This document shows, in pieces, positions 1 to 51,974 of a DNA stretch of 64,000 nucleotides. Position 1 is the first letter of the stretch; each line of letters starts with the position of its first letter. A model generated the notes under the pieces. That model searched no databases and had not been told where the DNA came from. It saw only the letters and a list, made by a program, of their open reading frames with translations. The stretch covers positions 160,704 to 224,703 of IMG/VR virus record IMGVR_UViG_3300036770_007495. One strand, 5' to 3'. The translations under genes and the position numbers were made by a program.

Positions 1-737
1 CCTGATCCATATGGCACAATGCTGCCCACTGGAACCTGATTGCTGCTCAACACCATGTATTGAGTTTGATAAGTTCCAGGAGTTGCAAACACAAGATTGC
101 CAAAGCTGTCAGTTGTCAAGACAGATCCTGCAGCACCATCAAATGCGGGCATGTTGAATACTGCTGCACCACCAGCTGCACCAAACTGAATTGCTTGTGA
201 CAATTGCAAAAATGCATTGTTGCGAGGTGTAATTTGATCAAACTGTTGATTTGCAGTTGTTTGAAGCTCACGCGCACCAACAAATTCTAATCCTAATCCT
301 GCAAGTTCAGTGTCAAGTTGCGCTGCACTCACAGTCTTGACACTCATGACACCAGTTGTTGCATTCAACTGCAATGTCTCATCATCAACTCTGTTGGCAA
401 GAGGTCCAGAGAAAAGTGTCCAATTGCCAGCGGTGCTGTATGGCTTTGCTGCAAGGCGATAAATGCCACCAGCAATGCTGTCATATGCTACATCACCTGC
501 TTCTGCTTCTGCAGCCCATGTGCTTGGATGCCCTGTTCCAAAATAAAGAAACAAAGATGTTGGAAGTGCACCAGTTGTTACACCATCACCAACAAAAAGT
601 CTGCGAGTATCAACAGTGTAGCCCAGTTCTCCTTCAGAGAGTACAACATTTGTACGTTCAGTATTAGAGCCGCGACGAATAAGCAGCTTTAAAAGTGTAT
701 TTTCTGTGATTTCAATTCTACCAGCACTATTGCTCAT
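1..737 (-). CDS. Tail fibre-like protein with Mtd_N-like N-terminal domain, running off the window edge at the start of a tail-collar-like domain (partial; not in the ORF track)
   Basis: Manual translation: MSNSAGRIEITENTLLKLLIRRGSNTERTNVVLSEGELGYTVDTRRLFVGDG...VPVGSIVPYGSG. TAAATA lies 5 nt upstream of the ATG. Confidence 0.8.
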   Translation of the reverse strand, partial: MSNSAGRIEITENTLLKLLIRRGSNTERTNVVLSEGELGYTVDTRRLFVGDGVTTGALPTSLFLYFGTGHPSTWAAEAEAGDVAYDSIAGGIYRLAAKPYSTAGNWTLFSGPLANRVDDETLQLNATTGVMSVKTVSAAQLDTELAGLGLEFVGARELQTTANQQFDQITPRNNAFLQLSQAIQFGAAGGAAVFNMPAFDGAAGSVLTTDSFGNLVFATPGTYQTQYMVLSSNQVPVGSIVPYGS

Positions 738-745
738 GCTTATAT

Positions 746-1585
746 TTAGCTAAGAGCCATCAATTCGCTAGGAATATCAAACACAGGAATTGCTTTTTTA
801 CCATATGGTGCGCCCATGTCAACAACAATGAATCCTGCTGATGACAGAGTGTATGTTGCAGAACCTGTTCCAGTGGATGCAAGATACTGAGTTGTGCCTT
901 CTTTTGAACCCAACGGAAACTGGTTGTAGAACCCTCCAAATGCACCATATGAGCTCAAAGGCAAACGTGATGCATTGTAGAGTGATGACAATGCAATGGC
1001 ATTGCTCTTGATCTGAAGAGATTGTTCATCAATTGCTGCACACAAAGTCATTGAAGCTGTTGAGCCAATGCCCTGACCCAGCAAAGTTGAAACATTGATG
1101 TTTGCATTTGTGATTGTACCAACACGCAATTGATTGCTGCTAATGATGATGGTGGAATTATCCACTCTTGCACTCAATCCTTGTGTTGTTGCTGCAATTG
1201 CACCAGACAAGAATACAAGTGAAGAACTTGCAGTATTGATGGTGAGTTGATTGGATCCATTAAATTTGATGGAAGTACCATCAACTTGTGCACCAATATA
1301 CTTCCATGCTGATGTTTGCGTTGCATCAGTACCAGTCAATTGGTACAGCAAACTGTTTTCAACAACCAAGTCACCTTGATATGCTGCAAGAGATGTCTTG
1401 TTTGCAGCAATGGGTGTAAATGATTTAGACCCCACAACCAATCCGCCCATTGTTGCACCATCACCAACAAAAACTCTTTTGGAGTCAATGGTGTAACCCA
1501 ATTCACCTTGATCAAGAGTAATCAGCAGTCTTTGTGATTCAAGACCGCGGCGCAATTTGAGTTTAATGATTTTTATGTCAGGCAT
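746..1585 (-). CDS. Virion fibre/adaptor protein with Mtd_N-like domain
   Basis: KLKLRRG...LDQGELGYTIDSKRVFVGDG motif. Start moved to the ATG at 1585, 5 nt after the upstream stop. Confidence 0.75.
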   Translation of the reverse strand: MPDIKIIKLKLRRGLESQRLLITLDQGELGYTIDSKRVFVGDGATMGGLVVGSKSFTPIAANKTSLAAYQGDLVVENSLLYQLTGTDATQTSAWKYIGAQVDGTSIKFNGSNQLTINTASSSLVFLSGAIAATTQGLSARVDNSTIIISSNQLRVGTITNANINVSTLLGQGIGSTASMTLCAAIDEQSLQIKSNAIALSSLYNASRLPLSSYGAFGGFYNQFPLGSKEGTTQYLASTGTGSATYTLSSAGFIVVDMGAPYGKKAIPVFDIPSELMALS

Positions 1586-1590
1586 ATTGT

Positions 1591-3192
1591 TTAGGGAATA
1601 TAAAATTCTTTGACGTACTTCCACACACCAATGCCGCCATCACATTCACCGCTGTGTGCAGCTCTGAAGCTTGTAGAGATAGTAGCGGATTTGATGCGAA
1701 TAAAACCAGTTGCAACTGCAGGCTGCAATCCATACTTTGTCAAATAATCAGTGATGTATGAAGTTGTAGTTCCTGTGCCAGATCTATTCTTGTAACAGAA
1801 AGCAATGTTGCGCTTGTCAATGTTGGGTGCATTGTTTGCGTCTGTTGTCTTGATGTCTACAGCAGAAGAAGTTGTTACATTTGTGACACTTGCATAGAAA
1901 TTCTTGTAATACAATTGATTGTCAAGATAAATGATGAGAGTTGTTACTCTATCAATAACTTTTGGTCTGCTGCTTGTGCCTGTTGATCTTGTGAAAGAAG
2001 AATTGTAAACATTGTCGCTGATGTCTGTTACAGAATTGTTGACAGTGAATGTGTAAAAACCGTCTCTGCACTTGTCATATGCGCGTGTAACAATTTCTAC
2101 AGCAATGAGTTTATTCTGCGCCATGTATTCAGGTGTTATTGTGTAAGTTTGAACACCAGTATTAATTGAGCAGCTGCCTTTCTCACCCTTTTCAGCAAGA
2201 TAGTAGTAATCTTTGTATCTGAAATTTGTGTAGAACATTTGAGGTTCATCAATTGCATAAAAGAGCGTATTGCCAATTGTGAGAACATTCATGTTGGTGC
2301 TGTCACCATTTTGACTGTACACACTAACTGATGATACTCCTTGTGAAAGTACAATTGCCCATCCATTGTCACCTGTTGCAGGAGTTGCAGGATTTGCTGC
2401 AGGGTTCACATGAGATCCTTTGGATACCTGAGTCATGTACATGTTGTTGTTGTACTGCTCATTGAACCAAACGGTGTATCTTCCTGCACCGCTGCGAGAT
2501 ACACTTGCAACATTGTATGCAGAACGAATAGTGGTGCTAACGCCCAGTGTGCCGGGTGCTGCAGTAACATTTTGTGGCAGCGGAAATGTAAAGTTGTTTG
2601 TATCAGTTCTTGTAACTGGGTATGAACCATTAAGTGTTGCATCAGAAGCAGTGAGGCTAATGATTTGTCCTGTAGCAAGACCATGATTAGCTTTGGTGCA
2701 CTGTACAATGCCACCGCTTGAACCTGTATCAACTGTATATGAAATTCCTGTGATGGGCTTGCCATCAAAATTTACCCAGCATTGACGAATGGGGCTAAGA
2801 AAAATTTGCTCAACAAGTCCTTTGCTGTTGACGTTGATGGTATCAATTTGAGAATATGATCCTTCAGGATTTGGATCCAAGTCAGGCAATGCTTCCAAAA
2901 CAACTTGACCAAAATCTACATGTCCATTGCCATCTGTCACAAGTGGAAACCCTTCACCAGAAACAGAATCAGTGTTAGTGTATTCCAACTCACCAGCAGA
3001 AAGTTTGCCAGAAATTGTGACGCTGCCACTCACCTGAATGCCATTGCCAGATACACCCAAAGCAAGTGCAGAAGCTTGACCACTACCATCATACATGGTT
3101 TGCAATCCCTGTGTAGGAAGTGCTGCACCTTCAGCATGCAATACACCCTCGTAGGTAGATTCAACTGTTTGATCGAGTAAACTGGTAGGCAT
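1591..3192 (-). CDS. Putative virion structural/fibre protein
   Basis: 533-aa S/T/G-rich ORF with 'CWVNFDG...AYNVASVSRSGAGRYTVWF' fibre-type motif. TAAATA 7 nt upstream. Confidence 0.6.
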   Translation of the reverse strand: MPTSLLDQTVESTYEGVLHAEGAALPTQGLQTMYDGSGQASALALGVSGNGIQVSGSVTISGKLSAGELEYTNTDSVSGEGFPLVTDGNGHVDFGQVVLEALPDLDPNPEGSYSQIDTINVNSKGLVEQIFLSPIRQCWVNFDGKPITGISYTVDTGSSGGIVQCTKANHGLATGQIISLTASDATLNGSYPVTRTDTNNFTFPLPQNVTAAPGTLGVSTTIRSAYNVASVSRSGAGRYTVWFNEQYNNNMYMTQVSKGSHVNPAANPATPATGDNGWAIVLSQGVSSVSVYSQNGDSTNMNVLTIGNTLFYAIDEPQMFYTNFRYKDYYYLAEKGEKGSCSINTGVQTYTITPEYMAQNKLIAVEIVTRAYDKCRDGFYTFTVNNSVTDISDNVYNSSFTRSTGTSSRPKVIDRVTTLIIYLDNQLYYKNFYASVTNVTTSSAVDIKTTDANNAPNIDKRNIAFCYKNRSGTGTTTSYITDYLTKYGLQPAVATGFIRIKSATISTSFRAAHSGECDGGIGVWKYVKEFYIP

Positions 3193-3215
3193 TTGCTTTT
3201 ATTTATCGCAATCGG

Positions 3216-5099
3216 TTAGTTTAACAATACTGTTTTAGAGCCTGATACAGAAGGTACAAAATTATTGATGCGTGTTTTTGTAATTTGAAGCACATCATTT
3301 TGCAAATCCCATATTTGCTTCAAAACTCTGTTGAGTGTACCTGGACTTGATGCAATTTCATTGTCATGCACATAGAAGTTGTTGGCATTGTCAATGGTAA
3401 TGCTGTTGAATTCATCATTTGTCAAAGCAACAATGCCTTGATTTACAAGATTGCCGATGTAGTCATAACTTGCTGCATATCTACCAGCAAGATAATTCTT
3501 TATGTACATTGTATTGGAGATGATTTTGTGCAATTCTTTGTTGAGAACAAATGCTTGAATCATTTCTGAATCATTAACTCTCAAGTTGTTGATTGCATAA
3601 ATGGTGAAGTCAGTTGATCCGAGCACACTTGTGTAGAGTGTTGGTTCTGTGTAATGTAAAATTCTGTTGAATGACTCACTCAAATATCCTGCAAAAACAA
3701 AAATCTCATCAGCATCCAAGTTGCTAGGCAAGAGTGACATGCTGCTTACTGCAATGCCTTTTCTCACAATGGCTCTTCCATCATTCCAGCGCCATTTTGC
3801 GCGATTGTAACGAGAAAACTCATTGTTCCAAATGTGGTCATTTGTAAATCCGCTTTTGTAAAATAGCCATTTGCCAATGCTTACATCTGGTCTGTTGACA
3901 AACTTTTTGAACACGTTTACATTGGTAAACATGTACATGATGTTGCTGTCATTGTATGAAAACTGCAATCCCTTGAAATATTCACCATCAATCAATTCAT
4001 CCTGCAAAATGTATTCTTGCTCAATGTTGAGATCCACATCACAAATTTGCAGAGTATTTGTTTTGGTTGTTAAATTGCTCACAATTACATAGACCTTGTC
4101 AAAAACATCATTGTATTGAAAAGCACGTGCAACTGTTGATGTGCCAATGGTGAATGCTCTGGTTGTTATGTATGATAGATTAGAATCATACACTTTGATG
4201 CATCTGTTGCCCTTGTCATGCACATACACACGATCAATGGAATCATTTGCATAAATTAAATCAGGGCCATTGAATTTTGTCTTGGCAAGAGCATTACCCT
4301 CACCACCAATTGATGCAACTAAAAATCTCTTGTTGGTAAGAGGTACATCATTGTTGTAAAAGCCACCAACATCATATTTGTAGACATTGTTTTGCTTAAC
4401 ATCACAAACATACATGAAATTGTTAGTGATGCTGAAGCTGCTGAGTTGCAAAAATGTTAAATCGCTGTTGGTATCAACATTTGCATTGTCATGAGTCACT
4501 TGCAATGATGTTAAATCAGGATTGCTACTCAACGCAATGATGGATGTAGGCGAAATGCCCAAGAAAGCATAGCCTACTTCATCTTGAATTTTTACAGCTT
4601 GCAGCTGAATTGCATTACCAATTGCACCAAGACCAACACCAGAAAAAGGTGTAAAAGTTGTAGCATCAGTTGGATCCTGTGCAATCCATGCTGGCAATGC
4701 ACTTAAACAACCTGCTGCACGATCAAAATTGTGTGGAATATCATTGCTTGCAATGAAGCATTTGGAATACAGATACAAAGAGTTGTTGTAGAGCTTATAC
4801 AGTCGGTCATTCAAAACTCTACCATTGAATGTCTCATTTGCTGCAATTTGTACATCAACATTGAAGTCATATGGCAGAGACAATTCATCTTTCAGAATTC
4901 TATCTCTAAAAAACTTTGAAGTCACCACATCTGCTGCATACGTATTTTTATCTGCAAGTTCTGCTGCATTATCAGCAATGTCTCTAGAAGCATAGATGTT
5001 TCCATCAACTACATGGTAGTATCCAACGTAGTCATTTCCGGTCAATGCAAAGTCTTTGCCGTTGGTGTATCCAACTTTGATGGAGGAGTAATCAATCAC
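3216..5099 (-). CDS. Virion protein with NHL-repeat-like beta-propeller
   Basis: KFNGPDLIYANDSIDRVYVHDKGNRCIKVYD resembles an NHL repeat. GTG start 5 nt after TAAATA. Confidence 0.6.
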   Translation of the reverse strand: MIDYSSIKVGYTNGKDFALTGNDYVGYYHVVDGNIYASRDIADNAAELADKNTYAADVVTSKFFRDRILKDELSLPYDFNVDVQIAANETFNGRVLNDRLYKLYNNSLYLYSKCFIASNDIPHNFDRAAGCLSALPAWIAQDPTDATTFTPFSGVGLGAIGNAIQLQAVKIQDEVGYAFLGISPTSIIALSSNPDLTSLQVTHDNANVDTNSDLTFLQLSSFSITNNFMYVCDVKQNNVYKYDVGGFYNNDVPLTNKRFLVASIGGEGNALAKTKFNGPDLIYANDSIDRVYVHDKGNRCIKVYDSNLSYITTRAFTIGTSTVARAFQYNDVFDKVYVIVSNLTTKTNTLQICDVDLNIEQEYILQDELIDGEYFKGLQFSYNDSNIMYMFTNVNVFKKFVNRPDVSIGKWLFYKSGFTNDHIWNNEFSRYNRAKWRWNDGRAIVRKGIAVSSMSLLPSNLDADEIFVFAGYLSESFNRILHYTEPTLYTSVLGSTDFTIYAINNLRVNDSEMIQAFVLNKELHKIISNTMYIKNYLAGRYAASYDYIGNLVNQGIVALTNDEFNSITIDNANNFYVHDNEIASSPGTLNRVLKQIWDLQNDVLQITKTRINNFVPSVSGSKTVLLN

Positions 5100-5107
5100 A
5101 TGAATAT

Positions 5108-8100
5108 TTACTCATAGTCAACAAATTCAACACCCAAGATGTTGATTGTTGCTGGCAGAGATTGTGAAACTTGGCTCAAGACTTGTTGTTTGAGTGATGT
5201 CTTGAGTGATTCATTTGCAATGCCAGAGTTTTTGATGATGATGGATACATTGTTGCTCTTCATGCCTGGTGCTCCAAATGCAAACATGCGCTTGATGACA
5301 TCAATGTTGTTGCGCATGCCACAAGGCAAATGGAATGTTAAGTCAGATACATTGTAATCCTGCATTGTGATGAATCTTACATCATTTTCTGAAAGAGCTT
5401 TAGCATAAATTTTCGGATACAGCAGTGTTGCATTGCTTGCAAAGTATGCTTGCGGCTGTTTCAAGAATTGAGCAAGTGTTGCACCATTGACAAATTGTGT
5501 AGTTCCAAATGCAATTGCATTTGAAATCAATGGCTGCTGCACAGCATATTTTGCTGCACCAAAATTAACTACATCTGCTGTCTTGCCATCAATGAATATG
5601 GTTGCATTGCCCTGAATGCCATCAAGTCTCAAAGCAAAATGCTTGGTTCCTGGCAAGATGTTGTCAAGATCCACAGTTGTTGTGACTGTTTTGATGTCTC
5701 TATTGTTGTATTTGTTAGCAAGCTTCACCACAAAATCAAGCTTGTTGCCGCGATTCTTGTATTTTTGCTGCAAATATTGTGAATTTGTGAGATTGAGCGT
5801 TGCATTTTCAGAGTAAAGCACATCAGTTGCAACAGATGCAATGATGTTGCCTTGTGTATCCAGCTTTGCAAGATGTATTTTGTTGTTTGCATCTTTGGAT
5901 GCAACAATGGTTGTATGAACCAATGCACTGCCAATGTATTCATAGCAGTTGGTGATTGCAAAATTGATGGTGCTCAATGCATTGAGTGTACTGACATTGT
6001 ATTGCAACACACGCTCACTATTGTATTTTACAACCTTGAAGTCGCCATTGAGGATGTAAATGTTTTGATCCTTATCAACATCAAAATCTCTGATGTAGTT
6101 GATAACTTGAGCAGAGGAAAGTGACTTGAATGCTACATATTGCTCATTGGTTGCATAGTTGTAATTGACAATTTGATTGTTGTTATACAGATACAAGGCA
6201 GCATTGGTGCCATAAGGTATTGCTTTTGTGCCTAGAGTACCTACAATGCCACGATCACCATACAAAATACTCTTGGATGCAGGTGCTACTTCAAATGTTG
6301 ACAGAGTCTCTGTAGCAAAATTGAAGCGAGATACAGTCGTCTCATCAGCATGAAGAATATACACATCATCATTGTTTTGAACAACATCAATCCAGTTGAA
6401 AGTTGATGGAGCATTTGACAAAAGGCCAATGTCGTTGAGTGTTCGTACAATTAAATCAGCATAAAAGCTTGGTGTACTTGCTGCCAACACATTGTAAGAA
6501 TAGCTGATGTTGTTAAAATCAGACAATCCATTGGCGCCTGCATATGCACCATATCCATTTTGCACAGCTTCTAAAAATTGTCTAAAGCCTGTGTAAAGAT
6601 TTGGACCAGTATTGACTTGAAATACAACTGCACTATAAGCATATGGTGAAGTTGTTAGCAAATCACGCGCAGTAACAATATCATTGTTGTAAGTTGCAGT
6701 AGAAGCATTGATGTTGAATGTTGTGGAATCAGCACCATAAGGAGATGATTCATCTTGAAACACCAAATTAACAACTCTGGTTATTGTTGATGTTGTTCTT
6801 GGTGCAGAGACAACAATCATTGTGCGTTCTGTAGCACCATATTCACTAAAGAGCCTCACATTGACACGTTCATCATACAATGCTTCATCATTATTGAAGT
6901 AAGGAAGCAGTGTTTGCTTGAGAATTGTATCACGCATTTGAATCAAAGGCTCAAGAGTTGAGTTCATGGACCCTGAATCATCAAACCAAATGTTGAGCTC
7001 TGTGTTTACATCAATGAGACCTGCATCAGCAAGATTGTATTTGTCATACAGAGTGCCATCAGCATGCATTTTGTACAATGCATAGTTGGAGATGGCACCA
7101 AAGTCATCAATGGCATCAAAGCGTGGCACAAAAAGAGTTGGTTCAGGCAACAAAGTCTGTGTGATGCGATTGAAATCACTGTTGTAAATGTTGAGAGCAG
7201 ATGTGCTCTGCAACATGATGAGTGGTGTTACAACAGGATCTTTGATGAGAGCAAATCCAGTATCAGTCAAATTGCCAAGAACTTGATAAGCATTGAGATT
7301 TTTCCAATCATCACACTTGAGCCAGAAGGAAATGGTGAATGCATAATTTGCATTAATTGCATCATAGTTCTGAACTACATCATATGAATTGCCATTGAGT
7401 TCATATGCTTTGTTTGCAATGTAGGCATCTGAATACAGTTGATTGTTGCTTGTCTTCCACTGCAAACTATCAATGATGAGTGCATTGTCATGAGTTGCAA
7501 GATGTTCATTGATGCGTTTGTTGCCAATTCTGTAGTAGAAGTATTCTTGATTGGGTTCAAAAACTACATCACTCTTCTTATCAAAGAAATCATATGCAAA
7601 TGATTGCTGTTGCAAGTATGCAGATACAAAATCCTCATATGTTCCATATGTTACATTAACAGCTTTAGCTGCATCCAATGGTGACATCTTGTTGGAATTG
7701 TAGTATCTATCCACCCATTCAGCAGATGAATTATTTGGACCAGCAGATAGCCAGGTGCAAAGATATTGACCATCTTCACCTTGTGCAGCATTCTTGAGAG
7801 CAAGGATTTGATCAGCTGTGTAAGGTGAATCACCAGCATAAGCACCATCTGTTCTCAATGAAGCATCATTTACATTGAGTTGCTCATACGGATACAGAGA
7901 TGCAGATGTTTTGAATGATGAATATGCATCAGACTTAGCAACAAAGTCATTGGAAAACATTGTGAAGTTGATGGTGATGTTTTCATCACCCTTTTCTTGA
8001 CTGTTGCCTGCAAAAATGTTGGTGTAATCTCTGTTGATGGGACCAGCATTGTTGTTTCTTTGGTTGGTGTAACTTGCTTTGTCAAGAGTACCAAGTTGAG

Positions 8101-9037: not shown

Positions 9038-9058
9038 ATGAGTATTTAACTCATTGCA

Positions 9059-10015: not shown

Positions 10016-10030
10016 ATGTGTATTTATGCG

Positions 10031-13650: not shown

Positions 13651-13693
13651 CACAGTTATTTAAACGCATGGCGCAGAAATGTAAATCATTTTA

Positions 13694-14152: not shown

Positions 14153-14160
14153 AATGCTAT

Positions 14161-14625: not shown

Positions 14626-14643
14626 AGCTTTTGCAAATGGGCA

Positions 14644-14668
14644 TAAATAAACTTGTCCATTGTATTTA
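14644..14668. promoter_or_regulatory. Overlapping divergent late-type promoters (TAAATA + at 14644-14649, - at 14663-14668)
   Basis: Motifs seen directly between divergent genes starting at 14625(-) and 14671(+). Confidence 0.6.
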
Positions 14669-14670
14669 CT

Positions 14671-17904: not shown

Positions 17905-17909
17905 AGCAT

Positions 17910-17930
17910 TATTTAGGGCTGCAATAAATA
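17910..17930. promoter_or_regulatory. Back-to-back late promoters (TAAATA - 17910-17915; + 17925-17930)
   Basis: Drive the 17904(-) gene and the terminase (17939,+). Confidence 0.7.
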
Positions 17931-43470: not shown

Positions 43471-43475
43471 ATGTA

Positions 43476-44057: not shown

Positions 44058-45201
44058 CCTTGTATTCCTTGATGAAGTTAACTTTTGCAACAGGATTTAG
44101 AGCTGGTGCAATGAAATGAATCAATGTGCGATCTCCAATTTCTTTTTCATACAAGAGAGGTTCTGCTGTGGATATGAGTTTAACTTTGTTATCAAGTTTG
44201 CTATTTTCTGTTAAGTTGTAAGAACAGAAATAATGATTCATAAATGACTGCTCAAAAAAGTATATGCCTGGCCACACACTCATGAGCCAGTTTACATTCT
44301 CAAAATGCTTTCTCATCTTGTCTGAGTTTACAAAAAGAAACTGGCCTGCATTAAAGGCCAATTGATTGCTATCATGCATTGCTTCAACTTGCTCTCTTGT
44401 CAAACACTTCAAACCATGATATTCACTATGATGTGAGGCAAAAGTTACCTTTGCTCTATTAATTGCAACATACAGCACTTCATGCTCATGGTCTTCATCA
44501 AAAATAGAATGAATATCTTTTGCAGCTAAAATATCAGCATCTAAAAATAGAATTTTGTTATAATCGTCAATCTCTGTAAAATCAAAAATTTTGGTTTTGT
44601 TTTTAGATATTTCTACGCCATCATCTGTATCTTCTATGATGTGATATTTGAATACAGCACCTGTTGGCTTGATTGCTTCAATGTCATCAGCCCATGACTG
44701 TGGCGCAATGAATAACACATCAAAATCTATTTGTGATGCTGTTTGAAAAATGCTCTCTATGCTAAGCTTTACCAACTTAAGGTAGTCTTTGTTGCCGCCA
44801 ACGCTGTAATATATCAGATTTTTTACACCTTTTGTGCCAATGACTTCATTGGTTGCACTCATGTAGCGCTCATTCAAAGCTTTCAAAATTTTTGCTTTGT
44901 TTTGATCTGTATTTTTGTAACTAGAATCCAGATTTATTTTGAATGGTCTTAGCAATTTCAATTGACTAGCTTCTTCAAACACCCAATTGTGTTTGAGTGC
45001 TTTGGTAAAAATTTGCTCGCTTGCATTTTTGAATTTTACTTTGAGAGAAATAGACTTGGCATTCCTAAACATTTTCTCAGAAATCAGAAAATGATGCAAC
45101 CGCAGCTGTGTGCTAAGCAATGGAAGTCTTAATCCATCAACTAATAATTCAGCAGATGCTACATCTTGTATATTAAGTGAGGGTGGTCTGAGTTTAATCA
45201 T
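44038..45201 (-). CDS. GT-A glycosyltransferase, GT8-like, with an extra N-terminal domain
   Basis: YLKLVKLSIESI, ILFLDADIL (DxD), FNAGQFLF, EQSFMNHYF, LIHF. Confidence 0.8.
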   Translation of the reverse strand: MIKLRPPSLNIQDVASAELLVDGLRLPLLSTQLRLHHFLISEKMFRNAKSISLKVKFKNASEQIFTKALKHNWVFEEASQLKLLRPFKINLDSSYKNTDQNKAKILKALNERYMSATNEVIGTKGVKNLIYYSVGGNKDYLKLVKLSIESIFQTASQIDFDVLFIAPQSWADDIEAIKPTGAVFKYHIIEDTDDGVEISKNKTKIFDFTEIDDYNKILFLDADILAAKDIHSIFDEDHEHEVLYVAINRAKVTFASHHSEYHGLKCLTREQVEAMHDSNQLAFNAGQFLFVNSDKMRKHFENVNWLMSVWPGIYFFEQSFMNHYFCSYNLTENSKLDNKVKLISTAEPLLYEKEIGDRTLIHFIAPALNPVAKVNFIKEYKDAYFPQ

Positions 45202-45207
45202 AATTTA

Positions 45208-47115
45208 TTATGGATAAGCAGGTGGCTCAAACACCCAAATTCCTGATACATGTGCAATCCATCGCACTCTTTCTGCAGCATTTGATGCACCTGTAACAGT
45301 AAAGACTTGTTCTGGGACTGCAGAGGTTTCTATGCCAAATCCAATTGCGCCAGCAGTTGTTACATCTGTTCCAATGGATTCAATGTGTAAAAGTTCTTCA
45401 TTGTAAGAATTGCTAGCTACTTTGCGTATCACAACTTTTCTCATGGCTTGTGAGAAGTTTTGACTATCATCAAATCCAAGAACTTGAATGGTAAACATGG
45501 CCATCATTGCCTGATTAGGCACTAAAAGTGATGTGATGTTGCTATTGCCAGGTGGATTATTTGCATTGTCTACTGAGAGAACAACAGTACCACCATTTAT
45601 AACTGTACCATACAAAACGTATTGAACGTGTTGTGCATCACCAGCAGATCCAAAATAACTGCTTGCATATGCATATTGACCGTGTGTGGGTGCTACTGCA
45701 CCATATCCACCTGGTATTGTAGAATAACTGCCAACTGCATTGTTGGTACTACCACCTGCAACTGTTGAATAAGTTCCGTTTGCAAAGTTGCCTGCACCGC
45801 CTGCAATAGTTGAATATGCACTGTTTGCACTATTATTAATCCCGCCACCAACTGTTGCATAAGATGAGAATGCATTGTTGCTTTGACCACCTGCAATGGT
45901 TGAAGTCTGACCGCCTGCTGTATTGTCAAGACCACCACCAATTGTTGCCCAAAAAGCAGATGTATCGTTGCTTTGACCACCTGCAATGGTTGAAGCTTGT
46001 CCAGCTGCATTGTTTTCATTGCCACCTCCTACAACTGCCTGAACAGCTGATGCTGTATTAGAGAGTCCGCCACCTATTACAGAATAATTGCCGCTTGCAA
46101 CTTGCGATGTTAATGCTCTGGTTTTCTGCCAATCAGTTGCATATTGACCTCTTTTATCGCCATTCGCTGAGGTGTTGTCAGGAATTTGAGCAAGAGTAGC
46201 ACCTGTGCCTTTAGCCACCAATGCTACATCAACGTTTGCAACTGCTGAAACAACAGTAAGCGCATGAACAGTTGTTACATTGTTGGGAGATGCTGTTGAT
46301 GAAACTTCTTTAAAAATAGTCAACCCACCACCTGAACTAGTGCCTGTGCCCCATGTTGCAGAATTGGCATTGACAGTTGAATACACAGAAGCATTATTAG
46401 CACTCTGTGCATTGATGGTTGTATATGCTGAAGACCAACGCGCAGAGTTGGCATTGACTGTAGTATAAGAACTGCCCCAGAGTGTGCTGTTGCTGTTGCC
46501 GCTGTAAATGATGCTGTTGCCACTCATGGCACCATTCACAGAAAACTTGGCATTGGGTGTTGTTGTGTTGATGCCTACATTCTCTGCAGAAGAGAAATAC
46601 ATGAGCGTCACGCCTGCACCGGCACCAGAAAGAATGCCAGGATTACCTAGCATGTATTTGAAACCATTGTATACATCAGGGCCAATGGCACCATATTGAT
46701 AGGTTGCATTGCCATTGTTAAATGCAATGCCTGCCAAGTTGCCTTGCATGCCAAGACTACCAAGAGAAATCAGGCCACTTTGATAGCTGCCTGGAACTTG
46801 CATCACTTCTGCTGCAAGTGTTCCTGAACGATCTGTACCTTGAATTCGTATTTTTGCTGCACCAACTGTTGTGCTCTCAAATACTGCAACTTCGGCACCA
46901 CCATTGCCTGAAACATACAGCATTGATGAAGGGGTAAAAGTTCCAATGCCAACACGGCCACTGGTCAGTATGACCATTTTTGTGGTTCCATTGGTGTCAA
47001 GATTTAAACTGTTTCCTGCAGTTGCTCCAACACTACTGCTTACCAAAACGTTGGCAGCAGATAATGTCTGCGGAACAGAAGCATTATCATAAACCTTGAA
47101 AGGAACTAAACTCAT
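45208..47115 (-). CDS. Tail fibre/adhesin with Gly-rich repeats
   Basis: About 9 repeats of the form STIAGGxxNxA; shares a module with 41932-43470. TAAATA-N6-ATG. Confidence 0.75.
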   Translation of the reverse strand: MSLVPFKVYDNASVPQTLSAANVLVSSSVGATAGNSLNLDTNGTTKMVILTSGRVGIGTFTPSSMLYVSGNGGAEVAVFESTTVGAAKIRIQGTDRSGTLAAEVMQVPGSYQSGLISLGSLGMQGNLAGIAFNNGNATYQYGAIGPDVYNGFKYMLGNPGILSGAGAGVTLMYFSSAENVGINTTTPNAKFSVNGAMSGNSIIYSGNSNSTLWGSSYTTVNANSARWSSAYTTINAQSANNASVYSTVNANSATWGTGTSSGGGLTIFKEVSSTASPNNVTTVHALTVVSAVANVDVALVAKGTGATLAQIPDNTSANGDKRGQYATDWQKTRALTSQVASGNYSVIGGGLSNTASAVQAVVGGGNENNAAGQASTIAGGQSNDTSAFWATIGGGLDNTAGGQTSTIAGGQSNNAFSSYATVGGGINNSANSAYSTIAGGAGNFANGTYSTVAGGSTNNAVGSYSTIPGGYGAVAPTHGQYAYASSYFGSAGDAQHVQYVLYGTVINGGTVVLSVDNANNPPGNSNITSLLVPNQAMMAMFTIQVLGFDDSQNFSQAMRKVVIRKVASNSYNEELLHIESIGTDVTTAGAIGFGIETSAVPEQVFTVTGASNAAERVRWIAHVSGIWVFEPPAYP

Positions 47116-47152
47116 TTGAGTTATTTATGAACTATACAATGTAGTTCAAATA

Positions 47153-49003
47153 TTATGCATTGTAAAATGCAGTGCCTTCAATGAGTGCTGTTGTATTATC
47201 AGCAAAGGATGTGATAGTGAGAATGTAATCGCTGCCAGATACACTTACATCAACATCAACCAACTGTGTTTGTGCTTGATTATCAACAATTGCGTACACT
47301 GTTCCCTTGGTGTTGTTGCCAGCAGTTTCAATGGTTGCAATGACTTCAAATGCTGTTCTGTTGTTGCCATTGATGAGAACAACTGTGTATTTGACAGCAG
47401 CAAGATTTGCAACAGCAAAGGTGGTAACAGCTGTTCCTGTAGATGCAACAGTTGATACAAACAACTTCTTGTTGAGGTCTTTTGTACCATTTTCTACAAC
47501 AACGCCTGTTGTAGAAACAGCATTGTTGGTGGAGAGTGTTCCAGTGACAGATGTATTGGATCCAAGAGTGATGAGTGTTCCTGAATCAGTGATGTTGCTG
47601 TTGGCAAGAGTGTTGGCATCAGTTGCCTTTGGTACTGCATTGGCAGTAAGATTTACGCTGCCATTGTCAACAAGAGTAGAGCCCCAAACGCGGCTATCAA
47701 TGGTGCGTTTCTTGAGTGTTCCACTTTCTTCTGTGACAACGCTGTCGCCAGAACCTGTTGCAATGGTGCCAACTGTTGCAGTGCCACCAACTGTGATGCT
47801 GCCACTTGCAGAGATGTTGCCAACAACTGAGAGCTTTTCACCTGGTGCATCAGTACCAATGCCAACAGCACCAGTATCAGCAAATACAATGGATCCACCT
47901 TCTTTGTCAACAAATGTTGCAATGGGCTCAACGCCAGTTTGTCTTACATACAATGCTGGGCCAGTGCCTGAATTGATGACTGACAATGCACTTGTTGTTG
48001 TAACAGTTGTGTCAATGTATACAATGTCACCAAGCACAGACAAGTTGCCTGTGACGGTTGTATTGCCTGCAACTGTCAAACCAGCAAACTGTGGTGAGTC
48101 GCTGGTCTGCAAACCAGTGTCTACATCAAATGTAACCAGATTCTGTGTGAGAAGTCTGACTGTACCCTGTGAAGGAGAAGATGCAGAATTGAATAGTGCT
48201 GCTGATTGAGTATTGTAAGAAGAGTAAACACTTGCATTGGCTGCACTCTGTGCATTGATGGTAGTGTATGCAGAATCCCACTTGGGTGAATTTGCAAGCT
48301 TGTTGTCAATCTCAGTTTCTGTGTAGTACCTGCCATCCAAGTCAATGGTGCCTACGCTTGTTGCAGTGACGTGACCAAATGCATCAATTGTTGTGCCAAG
48401 GCTTTGAATTACAATGCCATTGGAATTGGTGCTTGCAATGGAAGCGCCGCCAAATGTATTGTGACCAATTTCAACTGCAGCACCTTCTCCGGTGCCACTT
48501 GAGGACAGACCTCTGTTGACAGTAACTGTTGCAACATAATCACCTGTTGTATCAGTTCCAAGTTCAACAGAGTTTGGTTGAATTGCAAGTGTTGTGGTTC
48601 CAACATTGGTTGAACCATCAAATGTTACGGAACCTGCAACATCTCCTGAAAGTGTAATTGTGATGGGTGCTGCCCATTTTGTTGCTGTACTTGCATTGCC
48701 TGCAAGTGAGCCAATGAAGCTTGATGCATTGACTGTGCCAAAAGTTGGAGTGAAGCTGACACCAACAGTGACTGGTGTACCAGAATCATAGGATGCATTT
48801 GTGGCTGTTAAGTTGGTGCTGAATGTAAGAGGTGCACCACCAGACAAAGCACCAGCAAAAATTGAGTACAAATCCTGACCAGCAGAGAGAATTTTACCTG
48901 CTGTATCAATGGAAACATCGCTAGCACCTTTTGCAAAGTAAGCACCATACTGGCCGTAGATGCGGTTTTTTACTCTGAAATCATCAATCAAGTTAGTAGC
49001 CAT
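47153..49003 (-). CDS. Tail fibre/virion structural protein
   Basis: S/T/G-rich, GNASTATKW...ITLSGDVAGSVTFDGS fibre motif and SDSPQFAGLT. TAAATA-N7-ATG. Confidence 0.7.
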   Translation of the reverse strand: MATNLIDDFRVKNRIYGQYGAYFAKGASDVSIDTAGKILSAGQDLYSIFAGALSGGAPLTFSTNLTATNASYDSGTPVTVGVSFTPTFGTVNASSFIGSLAGNASTATKWAAPITITLSGDVAGSVTFDGSTNVGTTTLAIQPNSVELGTDTTGDYVATVTVNRGLSSSGTGEGAAVEIGHNTFGGASIASTNSNGIVIQSLGTTIDAFGHVTATSVGTIDLDGRYYTETEIDNKLANSPKWDSAYTTINAQSAANASVYSSYNTQSAALFNSASSPSQGTVRLLTQNLVTFDVDTGLQTSDSPQFAGLTVAGNTTVTGNLSVLGDIVYIDTTVTTTSALSVINSGTGPALYVRQTGVEPIATFVDKEGGSIVFADTGAVGIGTDAPGEKLSVVGNISASGSITVGGTATVGTIATGSGDSVVTEESGTLKKRTIDSRVWGSTLVDNGSVNLTANAVPKATDANTLANSNITDSGTLITLGSNTSVTGTLSTNNAVSTTGVVVENGTKDLNKKLFVSTVASTGTAVTTFAVANLAAVKYTVVLINGNNRTAFEVIATIETAGNNTKGTVYAIVDNQAQTQLVDVDVSVSGSDYILTITSFADNTTALIEGTAFYNA

Positions 49004-49034
49004 TGTCGGTTATTTATGGTTGTATGCTTTTGTT

Positions 49035-51974
49035 TCAACCAGCTGCAAACAAATTTGTGCGCAGGCATTTGAATACCTTGTCTGTAGCATTGCCCTGTAG
49101 AGAATGTGCTGTGAGTGAAACTGCCAATCCATTGGTAATGGTGCCATATTCTACCAACGGACCAGTGCTAGTAAACAAAATACCATATTCAGAAGATGCT
49201 GCTTCTGCACCATCACCAATTGTATTGATCTCACTGTAGTGCACTTTGTTGAGCACTGTGTCTCTCACTTCAATGATGTACTTGCATGAGTTGAAATCAG
49301 TTAGACTGTATGAATCAATGATGCCAAAATCAGCAATGGATGTCTTCTCAAAATTTGAAATGGGCTTTGGATTGATTTCAAGATAGTGAGACGCATTGCT
49401 GCCATCACCAGTTGCAAGCATGTAAATTCTGCCATTGGCTGTAAGATTGATGGTGCCGCTCTTTTTAACAATGCCATTGTACCATTCAGTGTTGATGAAA
49501 TTGGTCAGTGAAGTCTGTGCACTATCACGATTGATGTACAAAGTATCAACCAATTGATTGGTATTGCCGCCAGAGAAATAAATTGCACTGCTGGAACTCA
49601 CTGTGCCTGCAACAGTCAAATTGCCGCTGATGGCAACACTGCCAGTCACATCAAATCCAGACAATTCATACTGCTTGATGTCAATGTATGTGATGTTGGC
49701 AGATGTTGCTTCAAGCAAAGATGTTGTAAGCGTGCCCTGCACCGTAACATTGCCTGTTACAGTGCCGCCAGACAGAGGCAGATAATTGCCAGATGCATTG
49801 TTGTTAGCATTGATCCAAATGGCTGATGCAGAATTATAAACAAGTGTCTGTCCATCTTGTACATCGGTGATGCGAACATTGTGCAGCTCATCCAATTCAT
49901 AGCCATTGTCTATTTCAACATAAATTTTTCCATTGACTGTTGAATTGAGAGAAAATCCGACCTTGACAAGGTGATTTGGTGCCTGTGGTTTGATGTTTGT
50001 TATTGCACCCGCAGCAGTTGAGGAGAGATAAAGTGTGGTGCCTTCAGGATATGCTCTTGTATCAATGCCTTCAAGCTCACCCATGGTCATGATGTAGCCT
50101 TCTTGGTTGATTGCAGTTGATCCCATGGTTATACCAATGGTATCTGCTGATCTAAGATCAGAAGTAGCAAGTGCAGGCCACATTTTGCCTCTGTTGCCTT
50201 GCACACCTGATAGATAAACTACTGTGCCTTTGGGAATTTCACTGCCTGTTTTGTTGACACCAATGATCCACAACATTTTATTGATGGGATACTTGAGTAC
50301 AGGATCTCCATCCATGAATACCAAAGTACGCTCAGCACTATCATAGTATAAGCGCCCATCAACATGAACAGGTGCAACATCTCTGAGGGTGAATGTCAGC
50401 ATCTCAGCATTGAAAGCACTCATGGTGCTTACATTGACAGTGTTGCCAAATGGTGTTATACCCAAATCGCCAGATGATGTATTAAATGTAAGAGTTTGAT
50501 ACCCTCCTCCACCGCTAGAAAAAATGTCTGCTAGATCCACACCACCAGACAGAATCTGACCTGTTGCAACATTGAGCGTGCCGTTCATTGTGCCACCATC
50601 TGCATACTGAACAGCAACAGTGCCGCCTCCTGCATATGACTGAGCATAAATGGCAAACTTCTTATACAAGTCAGTCTGCAAATTGGCAACATGAGACTTG
50701 ACCTCATTTGACATTTCTGTCTTGATGGCTCCCAATGCATCTTTGAAAACATTGGCTTGAGATGCTCGAGCTTCAGAAATGATGCCTTCATCAGGAGCAT
50801 TGTCTTTGAGAGCATGAACTTGCTCTGCAAACACTTCTTCCACACATTCGCGAACTGATTTGATTTGCTTGGTTGCTATTTTGTCAGCAGCTTCTTCAAG
50901 CGTCTGTTGAGCATGATCTTTGAGCTGTTGTTTTAAGTCATCAACAGATTCTTTGATTTGATCAATTTGCTGTTTTGAAACATCTTGCAGCCATGTGGTT
51001 TGCTTGGCAAAAAATGCAGCAATGCCATCATCAAAATTTTTGACGTTTTCAGTTACAACATTCTCATTGAATTCTTTGAGCTGCTGTTCAACATGCAACT
51101 TGAGATTTTCATCTGCATCCTTGATGACTGCTTGCAGAGACTCTGACAGTTGCGTAATTTTGCTGGTGAGCTCACCCTGCAGTGCATTCTTTGCTTCAAC
51201 ATTTGCAGCAAATATTTTTTCAGACAAATGTGTGAAAGTGCTGTGCTCTTGTTCCTGCACAACAGTCTCAAATTGGTCTTCCAGACGCTTGCATGCTTTT
51301 CTGAGCACATCAATGGTATGCTTGTTGATTTTGATTTCTGCAGTCTGTTTCCACTGCTCAAACAAATCAGCAAACTTCTCTGCACCATCATTGATCTTCT
51401 GATTGATGATGTTTTCCGCTTTGTTTTGAATGCCAAGTGCAGAAGCTGCAATGCTTTGACGAGCATCATCAATGGATTCATCAATGCGTTCCAGCAATTG
51501 CTGCTCAACTTGCTGCAAAAACTCAACAATTTTGTTTTCTTTGTTGGCTTTGGATTCTTCCTGCAATGCAGTCCAATTGTGCTGATTTTCTAAATCAACA
51601 TCTTCAACAATTTCTTCTTGTTCAATGAGATCATCAACTTCTGCTGCCTGTTCGTGAAGCAGTGCTTCAGATTCAAATTCTATGGCAATGCCATGCAGCA
51701 GTGCGTGTTCATTGATGAACACTTGAGATGGTGCATTGGATTCTACAACAACCTTGAACTCAATGTCTTTGTAAATTTTGCTGCCATATTCTACATCAAC
51801 TTTGATGATGGGGCAACCATCTACGTATCTCTCTGCTGATTTGATGAAAGCTGCATTTTCATTGAGCGTAATGTTGAATACGTTGAAAAATGCTTCATCA
51901 ACCTGGCTGCATCGAATAATGTTCTCACCTGTTTTAGTGAGATTGAAATTGAATTGTTGGTTGTCCAGGCGCAT
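49035..51974 (-). CDS. Chimeric virion protein: long acidic coiled coil plus fibre-type C-terminal domains
   Basis: E/Q/K-rich heptads over about aa 110-480, then GGGTVAVQY, GYELDELHNVRIT, YLPLSGGTVTGNV and IIDSYSLTDFNSCKYIIEV motifs. Confidence 0.65.
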   Translation of the reverse strand: MRLDNQQFNFNLTKTGENIIRCSQVDEAFFNVFNITLNENAAFIKSAERYVDGCPIIKVDVEYGSKIYKDIEFKVVVESNAPSQVFINEHALLHGIAIEFESEALLHEQAAEVDDLIEQEEIVEDVDLENQHNWTALQEESKANKENKIVEFLQQVEQQLLERIDESIDDARQSIAASALGIQNKAENIINQKINDGAEKFADLFEQWKQTAEIKINKHTIDVLRKACKRLEDQFETVVQEQEHSTFTHLSEKIFAANVEAKNALQGELTSKITQLSESLQAVIKDADENLKLHVEQQLKEFNENVVTENVKNFDDGIAAFFAKQTTWLQDVSKQQIDQIKESVDDLKQQLKDHAQQTLEEAADKIATKQIKSVRECVEEVFAEQVHALKDNAPDEGIISEARASQANVFKDALGAIKTEMSNEVKSHVANLQTDLYKKFAIYAQSYAGGGTVAVQYADGGTMNGTLNVATGQILSGGVDLADIFSSGGGGYQTLTFNTSSGDLGITPFGNTVNVSTMSAFNAEMLTFTLRDVAPVHVDGRLYYDSAERTLVFMDGDPVLKYPINKMLWIIGVNKTGSEIPKGTVVYLSGVQGNRGKMWPALATSDLRSADTIGITMGSTAINQEGYIMTMGELEGIDTRAYPEGTTLYLSSTAAGAITNIKPQAPNHLVKVGFSLNSTVNGKIYVEIDNGYELDELHNVRITDVQDGQTLVYNSASAIWINANNNASGNYLPLSGGTVTGNVTVQGTLTTSLLEATSANITYIDIKQYELSGFDVTGSVAISGNLTVAGTVSSSSAIYFSGGNTNQLVDTLYINRDSAQTSLTNFINTEWYNGIVKKSGTINLTANGRIYMLATGDGSNASHYLEINPKPISNFEKTSIADFGIIDSYSLTDFNSCKYIIEVRDTVLNKVHYSEINTIGDGAEAASSEYGILFTSTGPLVEYGTITNGLAVSLTAHSLQGNATDKVFKCLRTNLFAAG

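What the first reader, a model, noticed from the sequence alone, without database searches (positions are those of the whole stretch)
1..51974. Recurring L-S-[A/G/S] tripeptide across unrelated virion-surface proteins: possible O-glycosylation sequon
Seen: by eye, at least 15 'LSA' tripeptides (GLSAR, KLSAG, CLSAL, LLSAY, WLSAG, NLSAT, GLSAT, ALSAT x2, VLSAN, SLSAN, TLSAT, ALSAY, TLSAA, ILSAG) and many LSG/LSS/VSG in fibre, PKD, NHL, LamG and sheath-insert proteins. I found no LSA or LSG in terminase, dUTPase, clamp loader or the Rml enzymes. Inference: one short Ser-centred motif shared by different folds suggests selection for a modification site, which would link to the GT and rhamnose genes. 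It could instead be a beta-strand/turn preference.
Basis: inference. Interest (0 to 1): 0.6.

Follow-up and report, generated by a model that had tools for sequence, protein, structure and literature searches.

The report
Selected Leu-Ser-small motif in phage tail proteins
The tripeptide Leu-Ser-(Ala/Gly/Ser) is over-represented and unusually well conserved in the outer tail proteins of this phage and its large uncultured clade, which fits a sugar-attachment site, but no modification has been shown and it does not depend on the sugar genes in this window.

Summary
All 15 listed LSA sites exist. In the window's ORFs LS[AGS] occurs 53 times against 26.8 expected. In the outer tail and fibre proteins it is 49 against 16.3, and no shuffle out of 5000 reached 49. 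In the rest of the 224.7-kb genome it is 53 against 55.6.

The signal is at protein level. It depends on residue order, on Leu and on Ser, and paralogy does not explain it. T4, cyanophage syn9 and cellular PKD-domain proteins lack it.

In about 80 related uncultured T4-like contigs, LSA, LSG and LSS rank 1st, 2nd and 4th of all tripeptides in the large tail proteins. Between this phage and a syntenic relative, the motif Ser is kept in 93% of sites, against 60% for other Ser residues, and only in structural proteins.

That relative lacks the window's GT8, sulfotransferase, RmlA and RmlB, yet its enrichment is stronger. So the proposed link to those genes fails. Both phages share a cluster of soluble glycosyltransferases outside the window.

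My best reading is an O-modification acceptor motif (confidence about 0.38). A structural motif particular to this clade is nearly as likely (about 0.35). Nothing here shows modification.

The parts
1..737 (-). 3' part of an 858-aa fibre-like ORF with an Mtd_N domain. It continues upstream of the window (G000:C1:158864-161440). LS[AGS] is 4 observed / 1.49 expected in the whole protein; 1 site lies in the window.
746..1624 (-). 292-aa fibre-like protein with Mtd_N. LS[AGS] 5 / 1.22.
1591..3192 (-). 533-aa tail-fibre-like protein (phrog_11355). LS[AGS] 1 / 0.75.
3216..5099 (-). 627-aa protein of the fibre block, no family match. LS[AGS] 3 / 0.77.
5108..9037 (-). 1309-aa protein of the fibre block, no family match. 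LS[AGS] 5 / 2.0.
9059..10015 (-). 318-aa protein with a tail Collar domain. It has one LSG inside the common fibre motif LSGGTMTG.
10031..10678 (-). 215-aa protein of the fibre block with one LSA.
10678..13653 (-). 991-aa protein of the fibre block, the richest in the window. LS[AGS] 8 / 1.14; the G001 orthologue (74% identity) also has 8.
38978..41125 (+). 715-aa protein in the gp7 position, directly after the gp6-like gene. It has an N-terminal PKD domain and a string of Ig-like sandwiches. LS[AGS] 6 / 1.05 at residues 108, 205, 342, 409, 601 and 618. All six are kept in G001, and five are kept in 19-26 of 32 family members.
41932..43470 (-). 512-aa Ser/Ala/Gly-rich fibre-like protein, paralogous to 45208-47115. 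LS[AGS] 2 / 1.35.
45208..47115 (-). 635-aa fibre-like protein. LS[AGS] 2 / 1.33.
47153..49003 (-). 616-aa fibre-like protein with no counterpart in G001. LS[AGS] 4 / 1.32.
49035..51974 (-). 979-aa fibre protein. LS[AGS] 5 / 1.26; the G001 counterpart (1396 aa) has 12 / 2.38.
43476..45201 (-). Sulfotransferase (Sulfotransfer_2) and GT8 glycosyltransferase set among the fibre genes. They are accessory: absent from G001 and from the other clade genomes searched, so the motif does not require them.
52254..54855 (-). RmlA, RmlB and an RmlD-like reductase. RmlA and RmlB are absent from G001, and the genome has no RmlC. The motif does not require them.

Best explanation
L-S-[A>G>S] is a short linear motif kept by purifying selection in the outward-facing tail proteins (fibre block, the gp7-position Ig-like protein and the distal fibres) of a large uncultured clade of T4-like aquatic phages. 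The most likely mechanism is that the Ser is the acceptor of an O-linked modification added in the cytoplasm by a factor encoded by the clade. The best candidates are the soluble glycosyltransferases of the conserved cluster outside the window (G000:C1:109202-117540: GT17, GT10-like, GT7C/GT2-like, GT2 and DUF5672, with two epimerase/dehydratases and a methyltransferase-like gene). In that model Leu before the Ser and a very small residue after it are the recognition elements. The window's GT8, sulfotransferase and RmlA/RmlB would at most elaborate the glycan in this strain. Shown: enrichment, specificity, conservation, restriction to outer tail proteins, spread across the clade, and co-occurrence with glycosyltransferase genes. 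Inferred: any modification, the enzyme and the glycan.
For: Enrichment: 3.0x in the outer tail proteins and none in the rest of the genome. Specificity: LS[AGS] 2.5x, against SL[AGS] 0.8, IS[AGS] 0.9, LS[charged] 0.95, LA[AGS] 0.6 and LT[AGS] 1.6. Both Ser codon families are used, so the signal is in the protein. BLAST-level paralogy explains at most 1 of 58 sites. Clade-wide: ORFs of 650 aa or more next to gp6 give 750/177.9 = 4.2x. In an unbiased ranking of all tripeptides in 108 proteins, LSA (6.3x, z 33) is 1st, LSG 2nd and LSS 4th. The flanks show only weak preferences and the spacing shows no period. Conservation between G000 and G001: 32 of 40 sites are kept as the motif, against 40% identity for all tripeptides. 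The motif Ser is kept in 93% against 60% for other Ser (Fisher 9e-6), and the motif Leu in 97% against 74%. In non-structural proteins the same tripeptide evolves at the background rate. In two AlphaFold models the 25 sites sit in mixed contexts: ends of strands, loops just before strands, low-confidence loops and helix starts. That fits a linear motif better than a single structural cap. Negative controls: T4, syn9 and cellular PKD arrays. In the same cellular set the known Bacteroidota sequon reads 1.59x, so a true sequon can be seen by this method. Glycosyltransferase genes occur in all five clade genomes that are at least 70% complete, and in 15 of 21 clade contigs overall. The cluster's ORFs have no strong hydrophobic segment. 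The genome has no hmC/hmU-type synthase, so base glucosylation as in T4 is not an obvious use for these enzymes.
Against: There is no direct evidence that any Ser is modified. The co-occurrence of glycosyltransferases and the motif rests on what amounts to one clade, so it is a single phylogenetic event. The cluster could instead act on DNA, host polysaccharide or lipid. In a beta-strand Leu (i) and the small residue (i+2) face the core while Ser faces out, so an enzyme could not read them on a folded domain. That geometry is what a packing motif would look like. Many sites recur at the same fold positions among homologues. Non-virion phage proteins are not depleted of the motif (0.95-1.06x). 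I could not compute solvent exposure, because the tools return no model coordinates.
Confidence: 0.38

Rival explanations
1. An intrinsic structural or folding motif. Leu packs into the core, Ser caps the backbone at a strand-loop junction, and a very small residue allows tight packing. It would recur in a clade-specific family of Ig-like and fibre modules whose common origin is no longer visible in sequence. No modification is involved.
For: The i/i+2 pattern of Leu and a small residue is typical of packing. 8 of 25 modelled sites have L-S as the last two residues of a strand, and about 8 lie just before a strand. A weak alternating hydrophobic pattern follows the motif at +3, +5 and +7. Most sites fall on recurrent alignment positions within the gp7-position family. 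The N-terminal 420 aa of 38978-41125 is a string of Ig-like sandwiches. By base rate, most conserved short motifs in structural proteins are structural.
Against: It is absent from other beta-rich tail proteins and Ig/PKD arrays: T4 0.9x, syn9 1.2x, cellular PKD proteins 1.2x. There is no extended sequence context and no peak in spacing at domain length; the counts dip at 80-100 aa. Secondary-structure contexts are mixed and include low-confidence loops. Leu is strongly preferred over Ile and Val (6.3x against 1.5-2.1x), although Ile and Val are the usual strand residues. At the third place Ala beats Gly, and Asn and Asp are not enriched, which does not fit turn propensity. The presumably exposed Ser is as conserved as the Leu.
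Confidence: 0.35
2. A linear motif read by some other clade-specific factor: a tail-fibre assembly chaperone, or an enzyme adding a modification other than sugar, such as phosphate, an acyl group or sulfate.
For: The same evidence that points to a motif recognised in trans: it is clade-specific, crosses different proteins, has little sequence context, and is selected only in outer tail proteins. Ser, Cys and Thr are the enriched middle residues and Ala and Gly are not, which fits a need for a nucleophile. Several conserved ORFs of unknown function lie in the tail module.
Against: No candidate kinase, acyltransferase or chaperone was identified. The only sulfotransferase belongs to a carbohydrate-type family and is missing from G001. 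Glycosyltransferases are the clade's obvious enzyme hallmark.
Confidence: 0.12
3. One reading: the window's GT8, with the RmlA/RmlB/reductase genes, starts a rhamnose-type glycan on LS[AGS].
For: GT8 and a sulfotransferase lie between fibre genes, and the Rml genes lie next to the 979-aa fibre gene.
Against: G001 (96% complete, syntenic) lacks GT8, the sulfotransferase, RmlA and RmlB, yet has stronger enrichment (3.05x) and keeps 80% of the sites. G002-G004 lack GT8 and RmlA. The complete genome has no RmlC, so it cannot make dTDP-L-rhamnose by itself.
Confidence: 0.05
4. An artefact of chance, composition, paralogy or a DNA-level signal.
For: The pattern was defined after looking at the data. 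Two hits lie in the common fibre motif LSGGT(M/V)TG, and two lie in a shared ILS[AG]GxDLxxIF motif.
Against: 0 of 5000 shuffles reach the observed count. p = 6e-10 survives correction for about 4.6e5 possible XY[abc] patterns. Permuted-order controls stay at 0.8-1.3x, apart from [AGS]LS, which overlaps the motif. The result replicates in G001, G004 and about 80 other contigs, where the motif comes out first in an unbiased ranking. Ser uses both codon families.
Confidence: 0.02

Closest known systems
General O-glycosylation sequon of Bacteroidota, (D)(S/T)(A/I/L/V/M/T) (PMC8550257)
   Same: A three-residue motif centred on Ser/Thr, with a small or aliphatic residue after the acceptor. It is spread over many unrelated proteins and can be detected statistically: 1.59x in 74 cellular PKD proteins.
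   Different: The first residue is Asp there and Leu here; Asp is depleted at -1. It is a periplasmic system of the cell, not of a phage. D[ST][ALIVMT] is not enriched in the phage family (0.89x). Here Ser is strongly preferred over Thr, and Gly and Ser are accepted at +1.
Virion glycosylation in mycobacteriophages (Freeman et al. 2023, as summarised in PMC12619734)
   Same: Glycosyltransferase operons encoded by the phage that decorate virion proteins made in the cytoplasm.
   Different: There the glycans sit at the C-termini of the capsid and tail-tube subunits of siphoviruses. Here the candidate sites are scattered through the fibre and outer baseplate proteins of T4-like myoviruses, and nothing has been shown biochemically.
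Virus-encoded glycosylation machinery of chloroviruses and other giant viruses (from my own knowledge)
   Same: Soluble glycosyltransferases of eukaryote-like families and sugar-nucleotide enzymes encoded by the virus, with atypical sequons on structural proteins. GT17 homologues of the cluster also occur in contigs of 100-330 kb that CheckV rates 22-77% complete and that lack a gp6-like gene.
   Different: Those glycans are N-linked on a capsid protein of eukaryotic viruses. I did not test homology of the machinery beyond the Pfam family level.
Cytoplasmic O-glycosylation of flagellins and pilins (Maf, GmaR and Fgt-type enzymes; from my own knowledge)
   Same: Several Ser/Thr residues on the exposed surface of a filament protein are modified before export. 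A hydrophobic residue before the acceptor has been reported, and the first sugar can be rhamnose.
   Different: No strict tripeptide is known for those systems, and I found no homologous enzyme here.
Strand-edge sequence idioms of Ig-like domains (for example the L-S-C of the antibody B-strand; from my own knowledge)
   Same: An alternating pattern of a core-facing hydrophobic residue, an outward Ser and a small core-facing residue in beta-sandwich domains.
   Different: That idiom sits at one fixed strand per domain. Here the sites are in mixed contexts without domain periodicity, and other Ig/PKD arrays lack the enrichment.

Membership tests
Bacteroidota O-glycosylation sequon D-(S/T)-(A/I/L/V/M/T) | Asp directly before the acceptor | tested here: not met
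   Leu precedes the Ser. Asp at the position before the Leu is depleted 0.5x. D[ST][ALIVMT] is 0.89x in the phage family.
Bacteroidota O-glycosylation sequon D-(S/T)-(A/I/L/V/M/T) | A residue with a methyl group (A/I/L/V/M/T) after the acceptor | tested here: inconclusive
   Ala is the most favoured (6.3x), but Gly (4.6x) and Ser (3.0x) are also favoured, while I, L, V and M are not (0.8-1.0x).
Phage virion glycosylation (mycobacteriophage type) | A glycosyltransferase operon encoded by the phage | tested here: met
   G000:C1:109202-117540 holds GT17 (E 8e-29), GT10-like, GT7C/GT2-like, GT2, DUF5672 and two epimerase/dehydratases. All are conserved in G001 at 60-85% identity. The window also holds GT8.
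Phage virion glycosylation (mycobacteriophage type) | Glycan covalently bound to virion proteins | not testable with these tools
   This needs mass spectrometry or glycan staining of virions. No cultured relative was found in 50,697 phage records.
Phage virion glycosylation (mycobacteriophage type) | Sites in the C-terminal tails of the capsid and tail-tube subunits | tested here: not met
   The tube has 0 sites. The sites are spread evenly along the fibre and outer baseplate proteins.
Generic beta-strand/turn preference | Present in beta-rich tail and Ig/PKD proteins in general | tested here: not met
   T4 structural proteins 12/14.0, T4 fibres 7/7.6, syn9 fibre 10/8.1, cellular PKD proteins 1.23x.
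Generic beta-strand/turn preference | One consistent secondary-structure context | tested here: inconclusive
   Of 25 sites in two models (pLDDT 71-73), about 8 are at strand ends, about 8 just before a strand, 3 are within a strand or at its start, 4-5 are in low-confidence loops and 2 are at helix starts.
dTDP-L-rhamnose pathway (RmlABCD) | RmlA and RmlB present | tested here: met
   NTP_transferase E 1e-51 and GDP_Man_Dehyd/Epimerase E 1e-74.
dTDP-L-rhamnose pathway (RmlABCD) | RmlC 3,5-epimerase present | tested here: not met
   PF00908 finds nothing in the complete genome, while it hits 11 of 14 control genomes.
N-glycosylation sequon N-x-S/T | Enriched in virion proteins | tested here: not met
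   200/190.2 = 1.05x in the structural set, although NAS alone is 24/10.7 in the window.

The most novel reading that the evidence does not exclude
LS[A/G/S] is the acceptor sequon of a cytoplasmic protein O-glycosylation system encoded by the phage. Soluble GT17, GT10-like, GT7-like and GT2 enzymes, with their own sugar-nucleotide enzymes, would coat the fibres and outer baseplate of a large, globally distributed, uncultured clade of T4-like aquatic phages with up to about 25 glycans per protein. Strain-specific genes such as the window's GT8, sulfotransferase and RmlA/RmlB would vary the glycan.
Probability: 0.3. Interest if true: 0.85.

Novelty: new variant of a known kind. Interest (0 to 1): 0.62.

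Why it matters
If the Ser residues are modified, this would be the first defined sequon for glycosylation of phage virion proteins, and the first case in T4-like myoviruses. It would give a sequence rule for predicting glycosylated phage surfaces from metagenomes. It would also give a function to the many 'orphan' glycosyltransferase clusters in large aquatic phages, and it would bear on host recognition, resistance to grazers and proteases, and how phage particles are recognised. If the motif turns out to be structural, it is still a strong, simple marker of an uncultured clade's tail-protein architecture. It would also warn that a strong sequon-like statistic can arise without any modification. 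In either case the claim can be tested with a single co-expression experiment.

Tried and rejected
- DNA-level motif: rejected. The motif Ser uses both AGY and TCN codons and no single 9-mer dominates.
- Recent paralogy or internal repeats: all-against-all BLAST of the structural set aligns a motif to a motif only once.
- Local composition: the permuted orders SL[AGS], L[AGS]S, S[AGS]L and [AGS]SL stay at 0.8-1.3x.
- N-x-S/T and the Bacteroidota sequon: not enriched.
- A tie to the PKD signature WDFGD, or to a domain period: none found.
- G001 as a 'phage without glycosylation genes': it lacks the window's GT8, sulfotransferase, RmlA and RmlB, but it carries the other glycosyltransferase cluster. 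It therefore refutes only the link to the window's genes.
- Test across lineages through GT17 homologues: 68 viral contigs were found. Their 10-kb flanks hold no tail genes (LS[AGS] about 1.2x). The ten largest have no gp6-like gene and are rated 22-77% complete at 100-330 kb, so they are probably other virus types. The test was uninformative.
- Cultured relatives: none. Megablast of 24 kb and tblastn of the PKD protein against 50,697 phage records found nothing, and the terminase is at most 38% identical to any record.
- The 888-aa ORF next to the Rml genes (54951-57617): no Pfam or PHROG family and no usable Atlas match.
- 'Moraphages' (PMC12619734): large aquatic phages with four core glycosyltransferase groups. 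I found nothing to show that they are this clade.
- Literature searches for a known Leu-Ser sequon or for glycosylated phage tail fibres found nothing relevant.
- Complex prediction was not used. There are five candidate enzymes, no basis for choosing among them, and a failed run would carry no weight.


Full report
**What the window is.** The window is the last 64 kb of a complete 224,703-bp virus genome with terminal repeats (G000, GC 41%). Pfam and PHROG scans show a distant T4-like myovirus. It has a T4-type large terminase (17729-19657), a tube, an 880-aa sheath, a tape measure, gp25- and gp6-like wedge proteins, a clamp loader and a dUTPase. A minus-strand block of large fibre-like ORFs covers 1-15114, a PKD/Ig-like protein lies in the gp7 position (38978-41125), and a second fibre block covers 41932-51974. 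Set among the fibre genes are a sulfotransferase (43476-44090) and a GT8 (44038-45201). RmlA, RmlB and an RmlD-like reductase follow at 52254-54855. GenBank phages contain no near relative: the terminase is at most 38% identical to any record, and the PKD protein finds no hit.

**The observation.** Against the exact per-protein permutation expectation, LSA is 19/10.4, LSG 15/7.4 and LSS 19/9.0. Taken singly these rank only 92nd, 73rd and 23rd of 8000 tripeptides in the window. Taken together, and in a structural set fixed beforehand, LS[AGS] is 58/22.9 (p 6e-10) and is the top pattern of all 400 XY[AGS] patterns. The remaining 270 ORFs of the genome give 53/55.6. The excess lies in the outer proteins: 49/16.3, with 0 of 5000 shuffles reaching 49. 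The inner tail and baseplate proteins give 9/6.7.

**Specificity.** The signal depends on residue order: SL[AGS] is 0.8x and L[AGS]S is 1.3x. It depends on Leu (IS[AGS] 0.9x, VS[AGS] 1.6x) and on Ser (LA[AGS] 0.6x, LN 0.9x, LT 1.6x). It also needs a small third residue (LS+T 0.9x, LS+charged 0.95x, LS+hydrophobic 0.7x). Both Ser codon families are used, so the signal is in the protein and not in the DNA. BLAST-detectable paralogy aligns a motif to a motif only once among 58 sites.

**The relative without the window's sugar genes.** IMG/VR holds a syntenic relative, G001 (203,774 bp, 96% complete, 50-88% protein identity). It lacks GT8, the sulfotransferase, RmlA, RmlB and the 616-aa fibre. Its structural block is even richer in the motif (69/22.6 = 3.05x), while its other proteins give 49/46.1. 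This removes the proposed dependence on the window's GT8 and Rml genes. In addition, the complete genome has no RmlC, so the three 'Rml' genes cannot make dTDP-L-rhamnose on their own.

**Selection.** In 24 structural orthologue pairs, 32 of 40 sites remain LS[AGS]. Only 40% of all tripeptides stay identical, and 36-40% of control tripeptides do. The motif Leu is kept in 97% of sites (other Leu 74%). The motif Ser is kept in 93% (other Ser 60%, Fisher 9e-6). In 122 non-structural pairs the same tripeptide evolves at the background rate. In a 32-member alignment of the gp7-position protein (26-95% identity), five of the six window sites are kept in 19-26 members. The family as a whole has 215 sites against 44.4 expected. 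Distant members keep 5-8 sites each, partly at other positions that recur within the family.

**Spread and controls.** A profile of gp6 homologues retrieved at least 588 stretches in IMG/VR. The best 80 loci (gp6 32-59% identical, GC 26-39%) have ORFs of 650 aa or more at 750/177.9 = 4.2x. Among the loci with at least two expected sites, only one falls below 2x. An unbiased ranking of all tripeptides in 108 such proteins (111,296 aa) puts LSA first (6.3x, z 33), LSG second (4.6x) and LSS fourth (3.0x); TPT is third. The flanks show only weak preferences: Thr at -6 to -4, Ala or Pro at -1, and Tyr at +3. The spacing has no period, and the sites are not tied to the PKD signature. A complete distant member, G004, again confines the excess to its giant tail proteins. 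None of the controls shows the excess:
- T4 structural proteins 12/14.0, and T4 fibres with the outer baseplate 7/7.6.
- The 6076-aa fibre of cyanophage syn9, 10/8.1.
- 74 cellular PKD-rich proteins, 1.23x. In the same set the known Bacteroidota sequon D[ST][ALIVMT] (PMC8550257) reads 1.59x, so a real sequon is visible to this test.
- ORFs of 68 unrelated viral contigs, about 1.2x.

**Structure.** AlphaFold2 models of the window protein (pLDDT 72.5) and of a homologue with 19 sites (pLDDT 71.4) show an N-terminal string of Ig-like sandwiches. The best Foldseek matches are S-layer proteins, filamin and Hoc. A helical and alpha/beta C-terminal part follows. The 25 sites sit in mixed contexts. 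About 8 have L-S as the last residues of a strand, about 8 lie just before a strand, 3 are within a strand or at its start, 4-5 are in low-confidence loops, and 2 are at helix starts. I could not compute solvent exposure because the tools return no coordinates.

**Candidate enzymes.** Outside the window, G000:C1:109202-117540 encodes two epimerase/dehydratases, a GT17 (E 8e-29), a methyltransferase-like protein, DUF5672, a GT10-like protein, a GT7C/GT2-like protein and a GT2. All are conserved in G001 at 60-85% identity, and none has a strong hydrophobic segment. So G001 is not free of glycosylation genes. GT10, GT7C and GT2 genes also occur in the complete G004, and GT17 occurs in G002. Overall, 15 of 21 clade contigs have at least one glycosyltransferase family hit, including all five that are at least 70% complete; the six without a hit are 25-52% complete. 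T4 and syn9 have no GT2 match. G000 has no thymidylate-synthase-family gene, so T4-style glucosylation of hydroxymethylated bases is not an obvious job for these enzymes.

**Reading.** The evidence shows a short motif that is specific to this clade, selected, centred on Ser, and confined to the outward-facing tail proteins. It occurs across proteins with no detectable homology and in varied local structure. Such a pattern is most simply explained by a factor of the clade that reads it, and the soluble glycosyltransferases are the obvious candidates. I therefore favour an O-modification acceptor site, at a confidence of only about 0.38. The nearly equal rival (about 0.35) is an intrinsic packing or capping motif of a clade-specific module family. 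The i/i+2 pattern of Leu and a small residue is what core packing produces, an enzyme could not read those side chains on a folded strand, and many sites recur at the same fold positions. The link between glycosyltransferases and the motif rests on what is in effect one clade, and no modification has been shown.

**Comparison with known systems.** In form the motif resembles the three-residue Bacteroidota sequon, but it fails that sequon's defining Asp and its cellular compartment. In principle it resembles mycobacteriophage virion glycosylation, which uses phage glycosyltransferase operons (summarised in PMC12619734). It differs from that system in site location, in target proteins and in phage type. 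I know of no described Leu-Ser-small sequon and no report of glycosylated tail fibres in T4-like phages, and three literature searches found none.

Noticed in passing
G000:C1:109202-117540 (outside the window; locus L039:4202-12540): A conserved minus-strand cluster of soluble sugar enzymes: two epimerase/dehydratases, GT17, a methyltransferase-like gene, DUF5672, GT10-like, GT7C/GT2-like and GT2. G001 shares it at 60-85% identity. GT17 and GT10 hit none of the 14 control prokaryote genomes.
   Followed up: partly
window 52254-54855 (-): The 'rhamnose' genes are RmlA, RmlB and an RmlD-like reductase only. The complete genome has no RmlC, so the likely product is a 6-deoxy-D-hexose, or else a host RmlC is needed. 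G001 keeps only the reductase-like gene (49% identity).
   Followed up: partly
G000:C1:121462-122088 (L039:16462-17088, -): A PTPS/QueD-like ORF, which hints at a 7-deazaguanine DNA modification. No thymidylate-synthase-family gene occurs anywhere in the genome.
   Followed up: no
window 1-737 and 746-1624 (-): Two adjacent fibre-like proteins carry the Mtd_N domain (major tropism determinant), as in targets of diversity-generating retroelements. I did not look for a reverse transcriptase or a template/variable repeat pair.
   Followed up: no
window, all ORFs: NAS is the 7th most over-represented tripeptide in the window (24 against 10.7) and often appears as YNAS close to LS[AGS] sites. N-x-[ST] as a class is not enriched (1.05x).
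   Followed up: partly
loci L118-L197, ORFs of 650 aa or more: TPT is the 3rd most over-represented tripeptide in the clade's large tail proteins (177 against 43). These are probably Thr/Pro linkers between domains. Thr is also enriched 4-6 residues before LS[AGS].
   Followed up: no
window 23484-23924 (+) and 15904-16620 (+): A TnsA-like endonuclease lies between the sheath gene and the lysozyme-like gene, and a PD-(D/E)XK nuclease lies near the head-closure gene. Both look like mobile or accessory nucleases inside the structural module. The TnsA-like gene is conserved in G001 (84% identity).
   Followed up: no
window structural ORFs: The motif Leu is encoded by TTG in 34 of 58 sites, against 41% of all Leu in the same proteins. 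This mild codon bias is unexplained.
   Followed up: no
window 17729-19657 (+) and G001:135860-137404: The terminase ORF is 642 aa here, and its Pfam domain starts at residue 150. The G001 counterpart is 514 aa and aligns over only 399 residues. G001 also has about 4.4 kb between the nuclease gene and the terminase gene, where this genome has about 1.1 kb. An insertion or a different N-terminus is possible.
   Followed up: no
window 54951-57617 (-): An 888-aa ORF next to the reductase-like gene is conserved in synteny in G001 (34% identity). It has no family, fold or Atlas match, and no LS[AGS] against 1.1 expected.
   Followed up: partly
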